In this document: in pieces, positions 48,301-51,300 of the stretch
Numbering within the stretch: the first letter of the stretch is position 1
Layout: each line of letters begins with the position of its first letter
Origin: Squalus acanthias
Lineage: Eukaryota
DNA length: 64,000 nucleotides
Direction of reading: 5' to 3'
Assembly (NCBI GenBank): GCA_030390025.1
Contig: CM059427.1
Span: 200,942,001 to 201,006,000 of the forward strand
Translations under genes and position numbers: made by a program
The notes under the pieces: generated by a model
Told to the model about the DNA's origin: nothing
The model's database searches: none
The model's input: the letters and a program-made list of their open reading frames with translations, nothing else

Positions 48301-51300
48301 GTGGTCAGAGAGATTTGGGTGTCCTCGTGCAAGAAACACAGAAAGCTAGCATGCAGGTACAGCAAGCAATAAGGAAGGCAAATGGCATGTTGGCCTTTAT
48401 TGCCAGTGGGTTGGAGTACAAGAGTAAGAAATCTTGCTACAATTGTAAAGGGCCGTGGTGAGACCACACCTGGAGTACTGTGCACAGTTTTGGTCTCCTT
48501 ATCTAAAGAAGGATATACTTGCCTTGGAGGCGGTGCAATGAAGGTTCACTAGGTTGATTCCTGGGATGAGAGGGCTGTCCTATGATGAGCGATTGTGTAG
48601 AATGGGCCGATACTCTCTGGAGTTTAGAAGAATGAGAGGTGATCTCATTGAAACATACAAGATTCTGAGGGGGTTGACAGGGTAGATGCTGAGAGGTTGT
48701 TTACCCCTGGCTGGAGTGTCTAGAACTACAGGGCGTAGTCTCAGGATAAGGGGTCGGCCATTTAGGACTGAGATGAGGAGGAATTTCTTCACTCAGAGGG
48801 TTGTGAATCTTTGGAATTCTCTGCCCCAAAGGGCTGTGGAGGCTCAGTCTTGGAGTACATTCAAGGCTGAGATCGATAGATTTTTGGACTCTCTGGGAAT
48901 CGAGGGATATGGGGATCGGGTGGGAAAGTGGAGTTGAGGTCGATGATCAGCCATGATCTTATTGAATGGCGGAGCAGACTCGAGGGGCCGTATGGCTGAC
49001 TCCTGCTCTTACTTCTTATGTTCTTATGTTCAAATCTTTAGATACTGACCATGTGATATATTTTTATTTTTAACTCCATTGTTTACAGGACTTTGAATCT
49101 TGGCTCCGCAACTGGCTGCTCTTCCAACTCATGCAGCAGGAGGATAAGAAGACACCGCCAACCAGTGCACCCAAACCCGAGCCCCAACCCAGACCCAGTG
49201 GTACGGATCAGTCATATCATTTAATCTTTCTCTTTCGCGACCATTTTCCTCAACGATTTCCCCCCTCTCTCTCCGCTCTCTAGTGTGATGGCACTAGAGA
49301 GGGTGCAGGGGAGATTTACCAGGATGTTGCCAGGACTGGAGAATTTTAGCAATGAGGAAAGATTGGAGAGGCTGGGGTTGTTCTCCTTGGAACAGAGGAG
49401 GCTGAGGGGAGACTTTATTGAGGTGTATAAAATTATGAGGGGCCTAGATAGAGTGGATCGGAAGGACCTATTCCCCTTAGCAGAGAGGTCAATAACCAGG
49501 GGGCACAGATTTAAAGTAATTGGTAGAAGGATTAGAGGGGAGTTGAGGAGAACTTTTTTCACCCAGAGGATGGTGGGGGTCTGGAACTCACTGCCTGAAA
49601 GGGTGGTAGAGGCAGAAACCCTCATCACATTTTAAAAGCTCTCGGAGGGTTGTCGGGCCGGAGGAGGTTACAGAGATGGGGAGGGGCGAGGTCCTGGTGG
49701 GATTTGAAAGCAATGATAAGAATTTTAAACTCGAGGCGTTACCGGACTGGGAGCCAATGTAGGTCAGCGAGCACGGGGTGGGGGGGTGATGGGTATAGCG
49801 GGCATCAACCCGCTCGCTATCAGTGGTGGGGATTGTATCACCATAATATTTTGATACATGTCTTGAAACAGCCGCATCATTTCTGTCTGCAACAGGGAGA
49901 AGGTCATACGCGAGCATAGCGATGAAGCCAATAATGATGGACCTGCCAATCACATCCGACACATCAAAGGAGACCAAAACCCCCGATGTTGTGCCTGAAG
50001 CAGAGGGTAACTATGGCAACTGCTGCTTAATCTACAGGAAACGCAGGATTGGAAAGGGCCAGCGTGGCCCGCTGGTTGGGAGCCAGTGAATCCGTGAGAC
50101 TAGCACAAGGGCAACACAGATTCAAACTGGTGGAAGGCAAATTTAGGAATGGTGTCATGCAGTTCTTCAACTCACACACGGGTCACCGTGTCCAGAGGAC
50201 ACGGTCTGCGCTTGAAGGGGGGGTGAATTCAAAACTAATCTGTGGGAAACAATATCTCAGTGAGCGAGTGGTCAATCTGTGGAACAGGCTCCCTCGGGAG
50301 ACGGGGGAAGCAGTTAGTGTTGATTCATTCACATGCAAATTAGAGAGATTTCTTTCTGAATATAACATTTTGGGAACCAGTGTCTGAGTAATTGGAGACA
50401 TGCCGTGTGGTGAGTGCAGCGAGCTCGGGAGGAACAGGTGACTTTGGACCTGTGGTTCCCAAAGCTCTCCACCACTGGGGATTTTCCTAACATGTCTGGG
50501 TCTGTGGTCGACTCATTGTTAGAGATTGATCGCCGTGATCAGTCAACAGCTCCATTATTGTTGGAGTGGGGCTTCAAGCCAAAGACATGAGCGAGTACAG
50601 GATAGATTCACCAGAATGCTGCTGGGGATGAGTAAAGGTGATGAAGAGAGACTTGAGATGTTTGGGACCATTTGCACTGGAGAAGAGAAGGCCAAGAGGA
50701 GATTTAGTTGAGGTTTGTAAACTTTTGAAGGGTTTTCGATTAGGTAATTGGTTAGGGGAAAGATTGCTTCCTATTCTTGGGGAGTCAATGACGAGGGAGT
50801 TTCAGAGAAACGTCTACATGCAGAGAATAGCTGGAGTGTGGGAATTTTTGCCACTGGGAGTTGGGGCAGAGACAAATGCATCTTTTAAGGAAAAACTGGG
50901 TAAATATTTGATGCTGAAAATACAGTGCTATAGGGAGAAAGCCTGGCTGTTGGATTTAGGTTGGACTGCTCTCGCAAAGAGGGGACAGACAAGATGGGCT
51001 GAATGGCCCCCTTCTGTGTTTAAAGTTCTATAGCGCTACCATGAGGTTCTACAGGCTCAGAGCCAAGCTGACACCAGTCGACACAAAAGGCTTTGAATCA
51101 TCACTGACAACCATTTGATAATTCAGGAAAGCTAACCAGGTTCTACGCACATGCGCTGCACCAACTGCAAAGAAAGTTAACTTCAGTCACAGGGTCAGCA
51201 TTTTTGCGGGGGGGGTGGGGGGGGGATTATGATTCATTCTTGGGAGGGTGGGCGTCGTTGGCAAGGCTGGCATTCATTTGGCGAAGATGGTGGTGGGTCT

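What the first reader, a model, noticed from the sequence alone, without database searches (positions are those of the whole stretch)
49896..50006. Extra CD74 exon encodes a second CLIP-like peptide after the trimerisation domain
Seen: a 111-nt phase 1-1 exon between exon 6 and the Tg exon encodes [10 protein letters not shown] (49922-49951), versus [10 protein letters not shown] in the CLIP exon (44799-44828). That is 6/10 identical residues with the other four conservative, and 23/30 identical nucleotides. Both exons start in phase 1, and the new motif is preceded by a dibasic RR. Known: mammalian Ii has one CLIP and no exon here. I recall an extended pre-Tg linker being noted in cartilaginous fish Ii, but not described as a CLIP duplicate. 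Inference: exon 3 was duplicated, giving a two-CLIP invariant chain that could engage a second class II groove or a different isotype, or release an alternative placeholder peptide. This matters because sharks are thought to lack DM. The symmetric phase allows in-frame skipping.
Basis: partly seen in the sequence, partly recalled or inferred. Interest (0 to 1): 0.85.

Follow-up and report, generated by a model that had tools for sequence, protein, structure and literature searches.

The report
Shark CD74 exon with CLIP-like motif
Sharks, rays and chimaeras splice an extra exon into their MHC class II invariant chain (CD74), and its core looks like a diverged copy of the CLIP peptide; whether it binds class II is untested.

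Summary
Window 49896-50006 is a 111-nt phase 1-1 exon. It encodes [10 protein letters not shown], against [10 protein letters not shown] in the CLIP exon (6/10 residues, 23/30 nt).

The exon is real. Spliced contigs join exon 6 to it in 3 of 4 runs and join it to the Tg exon in 4 of 4. One contig joins it directly to the post-Tg exon.

The same segment is present in 19 of 20 chondrichthyan CD74 proteins from databases. These include a nurse-shark entry named in UniRef and Callorhinchus. It is absent from the 8 bony-vertebrate proteins examined. It is probably the "extended linker preceding the Tg domain" of Criscitiello et al. 2012. I recall this from that abstract; the paper was not readable here.

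The CLIP likeness holds at family level:
- The consensus is MAMKPMMVDLPIA against [13 protein letters not shown].
- 2 of 20000 column shuffles reach the observed score.
- hhalign gives P = 7.6e-5.
- The CLIP core is the linker's best match within the CD74 profile.

The linker is less conserved than CLIP. The likeness is not significant on its own in skates, Narcine and holocephalans.

My estimates: real exon 0.97; CLIP-exon paralogue about 0.6; groove binding about 0.3. Groove binding was not tested. No paper found in the searched library describes the CLIP likeness, but the two key papers could not be read.

The parts
36262..36345 (+). CD74 exon 1, coding part (approximate; boundaries not determined)
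   Evidence: tblastn of Heptranchias P0012 residues 6-33, 82% identity
43716..43885 (+). CD74 exon 2: transmembrane and membrane-proximal segment; ends in phase 1
   Evidence: Pfam PF09307 at 54.1 bits (cut-off 26.9) on the open segment; splice sites read; tblastn
44779..44861 (+). CD74 exon 3, the CLIP exon (83 nt, phase 1 to 0); CLIP core [10 protein letters not shown] at 44799-44828
   Evidence: tblastn 85% identity to P0019
46552..46605 (+). CD74 exon 4 (phase 0 to 0)
   Evidence: sequence and splice sites; tblastn; its 3' end is the loose end of RNA contigs upstream of exon 5 in runs X2 and X5 (table 7)
47497..47592 (+). CD74 exon 5, trimerisation domain part 1
   Evidence: PF08831 at 25.3 bits, profile positions 12-45; joint to 49089 in 4 of 4 runs
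49089..49200 (+). CD74 exon 6, end of the trimerisation domain plus a Pro-rich spacer; ends in phase 1
   Evidence: PF08831 at 23.0 bits, profile positions 44-67
49896..50006 (+). The finding: 111-nt phase 1-1 linker exon with the CLIP-like core [10 protein letters not shown] at 49922-49951
   Evidence: joints 49200>49896 in 3 of 4 runs and 50006>53178 in 4 of 4 runs; contigs with 0 mismatches across it; homologous segment in 19 of 20 chondrichthyan proteins
53178..53378 (+). Thyroglobulin type-1 (Tg) exon, phase 1-1
   Evidence: PF00086 at 53.9 bits; joint from 50006
55735..55783 (+). Exon after the Tg exon (C-terminal tail with an N-I-S-G site); a further terminal exon was not mapped
   Evidence: tblastn; the first 29 letters after its leading G are the loose end behind 50007 in run X5, which is the Tg-less form that keeps the linker exon

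Best explanation
Shown: window 49896-50006 is a real exon of a shark CD74 (invariant chain) gene and appears to be constitutively spliced. It encodes about 37 residues between the trimerisation domain and the Tg domain. The same segment is present in sharks, rays, skates and chimaeras, and it stays in Tg-less isoforms.

Shown: its core is significantly similar to the CLIP core at family level.

Inferred (about 0.6): the exon arose before the holocephalan-elasmobranch split as a copy of the phase-1 CLIP exon 3. It gained a new, evolutionarily labile 3' part and donor site that restored the frame.

Inferred (about 0.3, but the single most likely specific mechanism): the disordered Met/Pro-rich motif hangs on a Pro-rich tether from the membrane-distal trimerisation domain. 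From there it makes a second, weaker CLIP-like contact with class II. This would happen either on the intact chain or as a peptide released from the C-terminal fragment in endosomes. It would give these DM-less animals an alternative placeholder or competitor for the groove.
For: Gene identity:
- Single exons hit PF09307, PF08831 and PF00086.

Splicing:
- GT..AG joints 47592>49089 in 4 of 4 runs.
- 49200>49896 in 3 of 4 runs.
- 50006>53178 in 4 of 4 runs.
- In X1 and X2 a single unbranched contig runs from exon 5 through exon 6 into the exon with 0 mismatches.
- An X5 contig joins 50006 to the start of exon 55735.

Conservation:
- The linker is present in 19 of 20 chondrichthyan database proteins, including the Ginglymostoma entry P0045, Tg-less Pristis P0016, Callorhinchus P0042 and a second holocephalan P0002.
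- It is absent from 8 of 8 bony-vertebrate proteins examined.

CLIP likeness:
- Profile consensus MAMKPMMVDLPIA against [13 protein letters not shown]. The score is 26.4, reached by 2 of 20000 column shuffles.
- Over the whole CD74 profile the CLIP core is the top match at 26.7. The next match, 13.4, is the other K-P-M-M in the CLIP exon.
- hhalign aligns 13 columns with P = 7.6e-5.
- In 9 of 20 species at most 10 of 2000 shuffles reach the observed score. In Scyliorhinus, Hemitrygon and Mobula the alignment runs 19-20 residues.

Purifying selection on the core, of 20 sequences:
- R 18, S 18, S 19, M 16, P 19, M/L/I 20.
- The four columns spaced i, i+3, i+5, i+8 are hydrophobic in 19-20 of 20. 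This is the P1/P4/P6/P9 anchor spacing of class II ligands, from established knowledge.

Disorder and context:
- CLIP and the linker are both predicted disordered in an AF2 monomer model (pLDDT below 50).
- Cartilaginous fish lack DM (PMC8010645, abstract and passages).
Against: - No binding evidence of any kind was obtained, and complexes could not be modelled here.
- The linker is clearly less conserved than CLIP. The CLIP-matching positions D (6/20), the second M (2/20) and the final I (4/20) are not kept.
- In 8 of 20 species (three skates, Narcine, two holocephalans, nurse shark, P0019) the linker-CLIP score is reached by at least 322 of 2000 shuffles.
- The nurse shark has S in place of the key P.
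- hhalign gives a probability of only 62%.
- The copy is not tandem to exon 3, and its end phase and length differ.
- No intron or synonymous-site similarity remains. Convergence of a Met/Pro-rich motif therefore cannot be excluded.
- In mammals, Ii is cut between CLIP and the trimerisation domain. In the one passage read, cathepsin S likely cuts there (PMC11087810); that these cuts come early is recalled. That would detach the linker from class II-bound fragments.
Confidence: 0.35

Rival explanations
1. The exon is real and conserved, but the conserved motif does not bind the groove. It is a processing or hinge site, or a docking site for another partner such as a cathepsin, the Tg domain or a surface of class II outside the groove. 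It would control how the C-terminal luminal part, with or without the Tg domain, is released. The CLIP likeness would then be only a relic of its origin.
For: - The best-conserved residues (G-R-[KR] at the exon start, then S-S) have no CLIP counterpart.
- The exon sits directly before the Tg domain, which is a cathepsin L-binding module (1icf matched; its role is recalled).
- The CLIP-register positions drift in rays and holocephalans.
- The segment is predicted disordered and so accessible to proteases.
Against: - The linker is kept in Tg-less isoforms (P0016, P0045, P0007, and the X5 contig). Its role is therefore not tied to the Tg domain.
- No protease motif was identified.
- The hydrophobic i, i+3, i+5, i+8 pattern is not explained by this reading.
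Confidence: 0.3
2. The exon did not come from exon 3. An intronic sequence was exonised in the chondrichthyan ancestor, and its Met/Pro-rich core resembles CLIP by convergence or by chance.
For: - The significant alignment is only 13 columns long, with an hhalign probability of 62%.
- The similarity was picked out after the fact.
- The copy is non-tandem, with a different end phase and length.
- There is no flank or synonymous-site similarity.
- Another lineage, a frog isoform (P0046), gained an unrelated 44-residue insert at the same intron. New exons therefore do arise at this position.
Against: - 2 of 20000 profile shuffles reach the score, and the CLIP core is the single best match in the whole protein.
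- Different lineages keep different parts of the likeness. Sharks keep M-M-x-D-x-P and rays keep the downstream S-x-D-x-P-K-A. This points to an ancestor closer to CLIP.
- Both exons start in phase 1, and the core sits at a similar offset in each.
Confidence: 0.3
3. It is not a functional exon. It is a chance open frame, or a rare aberrant splice product.
For: One gene model, Chiloscyllium punctatum P0021, lacks exactly this segment.
Against: - Spliced contigs at high depth in all four runs laid, from two study codes.
- A Ginglymostoma protein entry of 243 aa contains the segment.
- 19 of 20 chondrichthyan proteins carry it.
Confidence: 0.02

Closest known systems
CLIP segment of the invariant chain (CD74 exon 3)
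   Same: - A Met/Pro-rich core of about 13 residues with the same order of residues at consensus level.
- Encoded by an exon that starts in phase 1.
- Predicted disordered.
- Luminal.
   Different: - It lies C-terminal to the trimerisation domain, not between the membrane and that domain.
- It is less conserved.
- The exon is 111 nt, not 83, and ends in phase 1, not 0.
- Groove binding is unproven.
"Extended linker preceding the thyroglobulin-like domain" of cartilaginous-fish Ii (Criscitiello et al. 2012, Dev Comp Immunol; abstract recalled, paper not held)
   Same: - Same position.
- The Ginglymostoma protein P0045 carries the homologous segment.
- Restricted to cartilaginous fish in my sample.
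- This is very probably the same feature.
   Different: As far as I recall it was described as a linker, not as a CLIP paralogue. I could not check the text or its figures.
Alternative Tg exon (p41 form) of CD74
   Same: A symmetric phase 1-1 cassette inserted after the trimerisation exon. In-frame inclusion or skipping is possible.
   Different: - The Tg exon is alternatively used here: contigs branch at 50006.
- The linker exon appears in both forms.
- The linker exon encodes a disordered peptide, not a folded domain.
Alternative CLIP register ("CLIP2") bound by some human class II allotypes (recalled, no call)
   Same: The idea that one Ii chain can offer more than one groove-binding core.
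   Different: In that case the two overlapping registers lie within the same exon-3 segment. Here a separate exon lies about 110 residues downstream.

Membership tests
CD74 / MHC class II invariant chain gene | N-terminal transmembrane and class II-interacting region (Pfam PF09307) | tested here: met
   Exon 2 open segment scores 54.1 bits against a cut-off of 26.9.
CD74 / MHC class II invariant chain gene | Trimerisation domain (PF08831) | tested here: met
   The two exons were searched separately. They score 25.3 bits (profile positions 12-45) and 23.0 bits (positions 44-67) against a cut-off of 25. Together they cover positions 12-67 of 69. The exons were not joined.
CD74 / MHC class II invariant chain gene | Optional thyroglobulin type-1 domain (PF00086) | tested here: met
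   53.9 bits against a cut-off of 20.6.
[quoted passage not shown] | Sequence related to the CLIP core | tested here: met
   Window pair: score 41, reached by 9 of 20000 shuffles. Profiles: 2 of 20000 shuffles. hhalign P = 7.6e-5 with probability 62%. The likeness is weak or absent in 8 of 20 species taken alone.
[quoted passage not shown] | Position between the membrane-proximal helix and the trimerisation domain | tested here: not met
   It lies after the trimerisation domain and a Pro-rich spacer.
[quoted passage not shown] | Occupies the class II peptide groove and is left there after Ii proteolysis | not testable with these tools
   No multimer modelling, binding data or eluted-peptide data were available. 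The AF2 monomer model shows only disorder.
[quoted passage not shown] | Matches the Pfam CLIP model on its own | tested here: inconclusive
   The 36-residue exon peptide has no Pfam hit at E up to 10. The genuine 27-residue CLIP exon peptide has none either.
Chondrichthyan pre-Tg linker of Ii | Lies between the trimerisation and Tg domains, is present in cartilaginous fishes and absent from bony vertebrates | tested here: met
   Present in 19 of 20 chondrichthyan proteins and in the window. Absent from 8 of 8 bony-vertebrate proteins examined, one of which has an unrelated insert.

The most novel reading that the evidence does not exclude
Cartilaginous-fish invariant chain carries two functional groove-binding segments. 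The second is a CLIP paralogue tethered above the grooves. It would serve one of three roles: a built-in competitor or exchange aid that stands in for the missing DM; a placeholder for the second of the two ancient shark class II lineages; or a way for one Ii trimer to chaperone more than three class II dimers.
Probability: 0.2. Interest if true: 0.85.

Novelty: new variant of a known kind. Interest (0 to 1): 0.58.

Why it matters
Cartilaginous and ray-finned fishes have class II and Ii but no DM. How CLIP is exchanged for antigenic peptide in them is an open question (PMC8010645, passages read).

A conserved, expressed, CLIP-like second motif in shark Ii gives that question a concrete target. 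The motif can be synthesised, mutated, modelled against both shark class II lineages and looked for in eluted peptides.

If it proves to be only a relic, it still documents an internal exon duplication in a gene said, in the abstract I recall from Criscitiello et al. 2012, to have kept its exon structure for about 450 million years. It also refines the annotation of the "extended linker".

Shark Ii segments are also being used as vaccine adjuvant modules (PMC6177389, passages read).

Tried and rejected
- **Pfam on the exon peptide alone.** No hit, but the true CLIP exon peptide also gives none, so this is uninformative.
- **Nucleotide identity as independent evidence.** Rejected: 23/30 follows from the residues, and only 1 of 4 free third positions agrees.
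- **Intron-flank similarity between the two exons.** None was found beyond the 25-nt core and short chance matches.
- **Extra cryptic copies.** The degenerate pattern occurs only at the two exons across six frames.
- **AF2 monomer of Heptranchias CD74 (P0012) with a 25-row alignment.** Mean pLDDT was 55. CLIP and the linker were both below 50, so the model shows disorder only and was not sent to fold search.
- **Exon structure in other species.** The C. punctatum model lacks exactly the segment that C. plagiosum has.
- **The window's own full-length protein and its species.** Neither was found. The closest proteins compared are Heptranchias P0012 and UniRef P0019.
- **Exon skipping.** No 49200>53178 or 49200>55735 joint is among the 15 joints listed. 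However, 143 more were not shown, and contigs drop rare forms, so skipping is not excluded.
- **Literature searches.**
  - 'CLIP-like' + 'invariant chain': 0 papers.
  - 'invariant chain' + 'cartilaginous fish' + 'linker' + 'thyroglobulin': 0 papers.
  - 'CD74' + 'elephant shark' + 'CLIP' + 'class II': 0 papers.
  - 'invariant chain' + 'shark' + 'exon' + 'thyroglobulin': 2 papers, neither about this feature.
  - Searches gave only background.
- **Papers not held.** Criscitiello et al. 2012 and Dijkstra & Yamaguchi 2019 could not be read. I therefore cannot say the likeness is not in print.
- **Supplements.** None were requested. The SI figures of PMC11087810 on the orientation of the trimerisation domain might bear on whether the tether can reach a groove. 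The supplementary alignments of the two unread papers might bear on priority.
- **Correction to my notebook.** Entry 2 says at most 10 of 2000 shuffles in 10 of 20 species. The right count is 9 of 20; Chiloscyllium has 11.
- **Row dropped before counting.** P0021 was left out of the linker alignment because it has no linker. The cluster members P0024-P0037 (near-identical to P0007) were never examined.
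Full report
**What is at the coordinates.**
- Window 49896-50006 is 111 nt. It is bounded by AG and GT and is open in the frame that takes two bases at its start and leaves one at its end. It encodes [36 protein letters not shown].
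- [10 protein letters not shown] (49922-49951) and [10 protein letters not shown] (44799-44828) share 6 of 10 residues and 23 of 30 bases.
- The CLIP exon is 44779-44861. It starts in phase 1 like the new exon but ends in phase 0.
- The pair scores 41 with BLOSUM62, and 9 of 20000 shuffles of the exon peptide reach that. The other exon peptides score 11-21.
- A degenerate form of the motif occurs only at these two places in all six frames of the window.
- The base identity is what the residues dictate: 1 of 4 free third positions agrees. Nothing in the flanking introns is alike.

**The gene.**
- Searched exon by exon, the pieces hit the CLIP/class II-interacting family (54.1 bits), the Ii trimerisation domain (25.3 and 23.0 bits, together covering profile positions 12-67) and a thyroglobulin type-1 repeat (53.9 bits).
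- tblastn of database shark proteins, plus reading of splice sites, gives this exon map:
  - exon 1 near 36262-36345
  - exon 2, 43716-43885
  - exon 3 (CLIP), 44779-44861
  - exon 4, 46552-46605
  - exon 5, 47497-47592
  - exon 6, 49089-49200
  - the linker exon, 49896-50006
  - the Tg exon, 53178-53378
  - an exon at 55735-55783
All full-length comparisons use database proteins of other species.

**Is it expressed?**
- One run search gave runs that hold about a third of the sampled words. Four of them, from two organism codes and two studies, were laid on 47450-53400.
- The tool only guesses that the runs are RNA. The contigs, however, skip introns at GT..AG, so they are transcripts.
- Joints:
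  - 47592>49089 in 4 of 4 runs.
  - 49200>49896 in 3 of 4 runs. X6 has no contig across it, though X6 does cover the exon and its downstream joint.
  - 50006>53178 in 4 of 4 runs.
- In X1 and X2 one unbranched contig (787 and 754 nt) runs from exon 5 through exon 6 into the linker exon with no mismatch. It stops at 50006, where the paths split.
- In X5 a contig continues from 50006 with the first letters of the exon at 55735. That is a Tg-less message that keeps the linker exon.
- No joint that skips the linker exon is among the 15 listed. But 143 were not shown and contigs drop rare forms, so I call the exon "apparently constitutive" and nothing stronger.

**Other species.**
- A phmmer search with exon 2 alone and three searches with database proteins gave 20 chondrichthyan CD74 proteins.
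- Nineteen of them carry a homologous segment after the trimerisation domain:
  - Ten from sharks, including the Ginglymostoma entry P0045 (243 aa, Tg-less).
  - Seven from skates and rays, including Tg-less Pristis P0016 and a transcript-derived skate protein.
  - Two holocephalans: Callorhinchus P0042 and an unnamed Logan protein 75% identical to it.
- The exception, the Chiloscyllium punctatum model P0021, lacks exactly the 28 residues that C. plagiosum has. That is what skipping, or missing, a discrete phase 1-1 exon would give.
- Eight bony-vertebrate proteins have no such segment. They come from coelacanth (2), pika, turtle, frogs (3) and one unnamed source. One frog isoform has an unrelated 44-residue insert at the same place.
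- This is very probably the [quoted passage not shown] that I recall from the abstract of Criscitiello et al. 2012. The paper is not held, so the existence of the segment should not be counted as new.

**Is the CLIP likeness real?**
- Across the 19 proteins and the window, the CLIP consensus [13 protein letters not shown] faces the linker consensus MAMKPMMVDLPIA. The best ungapped profile segment scores 26.4, and 2 of 20000 shuffles of the linker's column order reach that.
- When the linker core is scanned over the whole CD74 profile, the CLIP core is first at 26.7. Second, at 13.4, is the other K-P-M-M inside the CLIP exon.
- hhalign aligns 13 columns with P = 7.6e-5 and probability 62%.
- Species by species:
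  - 9 of 20 have at most 10 of 2000 shuffles reaching the observed score.
  - In Scyliorhinus, Hemitrygon and Mobula the alignment runs 19-20 residues, into the S-x-D-x-P-K-A that follows the core.
  - 3 of 20 are intermediate (11, 64 and 98 of 2000).
  - 8 of 20 are not significant alone (322 to 1880 of 2000): three skates, Narcine, both holocephalans, nurse shark and P0019.
- Sharks and rays keep different parts of the likeness. That fits descent from an ancestor closer to CLIP better than it fits chance.
- The species are related, the stretch is short and the comparison was chosen after the fact. I therefore put paralogy at about 0.6.
- The origin would be a non-tandem copy of exon 3 that kept its phase-1 acceptor and gained a new 3' part. 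That 3' part is variable in sequence and length; it is ten residues shorter in orectolobiform sharks.

**What is conserved.**
- The linker is less conserved than CLIP. Counts below are of 20 sequences.
- CLIP columns: R/K 20, P 20, M 17, M 16, M 18, D 17, P 20, Y 20.
- The best-kept part of the linker begins upstream: R 18, a basic second residue 17, S 18, S 19, M 16, P 19, M/L/I 20.
- Four columns spaced i, i+3, i+5, i+8 are hydrophobic in 19-20 of 20. This is the anchor spacing of class II ligands, from established knowledge. It is a lead, not a test.
- The Pro-rich spacer before the linker and the tail of the exon are poorly conserved. The core is therefore a selected linear motif and not mere spacer.
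- An AF2 monomer model of Heptranchias CD74 leaves both CLIP and the linker below pLDDT 50.

**How it may work.**
- In the human Ii-class II cryo-EM study, the trimerisation domain is membrane-distal and flexible. The in vitro digestion in that paper suggests cathepsin S targets the region between CLIP and that domain (PMC11087810, passages read).
- A motif on a roughly 20-residue Pro-rich tether from that domain could plausibly reach a groove. Alternatively it could be released with the C-terminal fragment and bind as a peptide. Both are inference.
- Cartilaginous fish lack DM, and sharks have two ancient class II lineages (PMC8010645, abstract and passages). This makes a second placeholder attractive, but nothing here tests it.
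- I give groove binding about 0.3.
- A processing or docking site with only relic likeness gets a similar weight, because the best-conserved residues are not CLIP-like.
- That the exon is an artefact is contradicted.

**Novelty.**
- Searches of the held library found no paper that calls the linker CLIP-like.
- The two papers most likely to have noticed it could not be read, and supplements were not seen.
- I rate the feature a new variant of a known kind. The gene and the linker are known. The new point is the CLIP-paralogue reading, now supported by expression data and family-wide statistics.

Noticed in passing
window 54538-55520 and 51733-52020: Two arrays of the same 58-nt tandem repeat lie in the introns on either side of the Tg exon: about 12.5 or more copies at 94% matches, and 5 copies at 96%. 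Because 58 is not a multiple of 3, all three frames read through as long repetitive ORFs.
   Followed up: partly
window 38511-39017, 48542-48934, 49225-49632, 50031-50384, 50632-51030, 59514-59687: Repeated retroelement-like ORF fragments lie in the introns and flanks of CD74. They share stretches such as ...[12 protein letters not shown]...[14 protein letters not shown].... RNA contigs pile up on them at very high summed depth, so depth in these bins says nothing about CD74.
   Followed up: no
window 44781-44861: The CLIP exon itself holds two basic-Pro-Met-Met units: K-P-M-M-H and then R-P-M-M-M-D. The second-best match of the linker core is to the first of them. The chain therefore has three such units in all.
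   Followed up: partly
protein P0046 (Mixophyes fleayi isoform X1) against P0048: A frog CD74 isoform carries an unrelated 44-residue Ser/Thr-rich insert at the same position, between the trimerisation domain and the Tg domain. This suggests the intron is a recurrent site of exon gain.
   Followed up: no
proteins P0021 against P0017; P0017, P0018, P0045: The Chiloscyllium punctatum gene model lacks exactly the linker segment. Orectolobiform sharks have a linker about ten residues shorter than other sharks. The nurse shark has S where 19 of 20 sequences have the key P.
   Followed up: partly
window 42877-43341 and 52988-53035; 37865-38421: G-rich low-complexity stretches lie upstream of exon 2 and upstream of the Tg exon. 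A microsatellite-like stretch reads as T-Q-T-Q-M-Q repeats.
   Followed up: no
It was not examined here.
   Followed up: no
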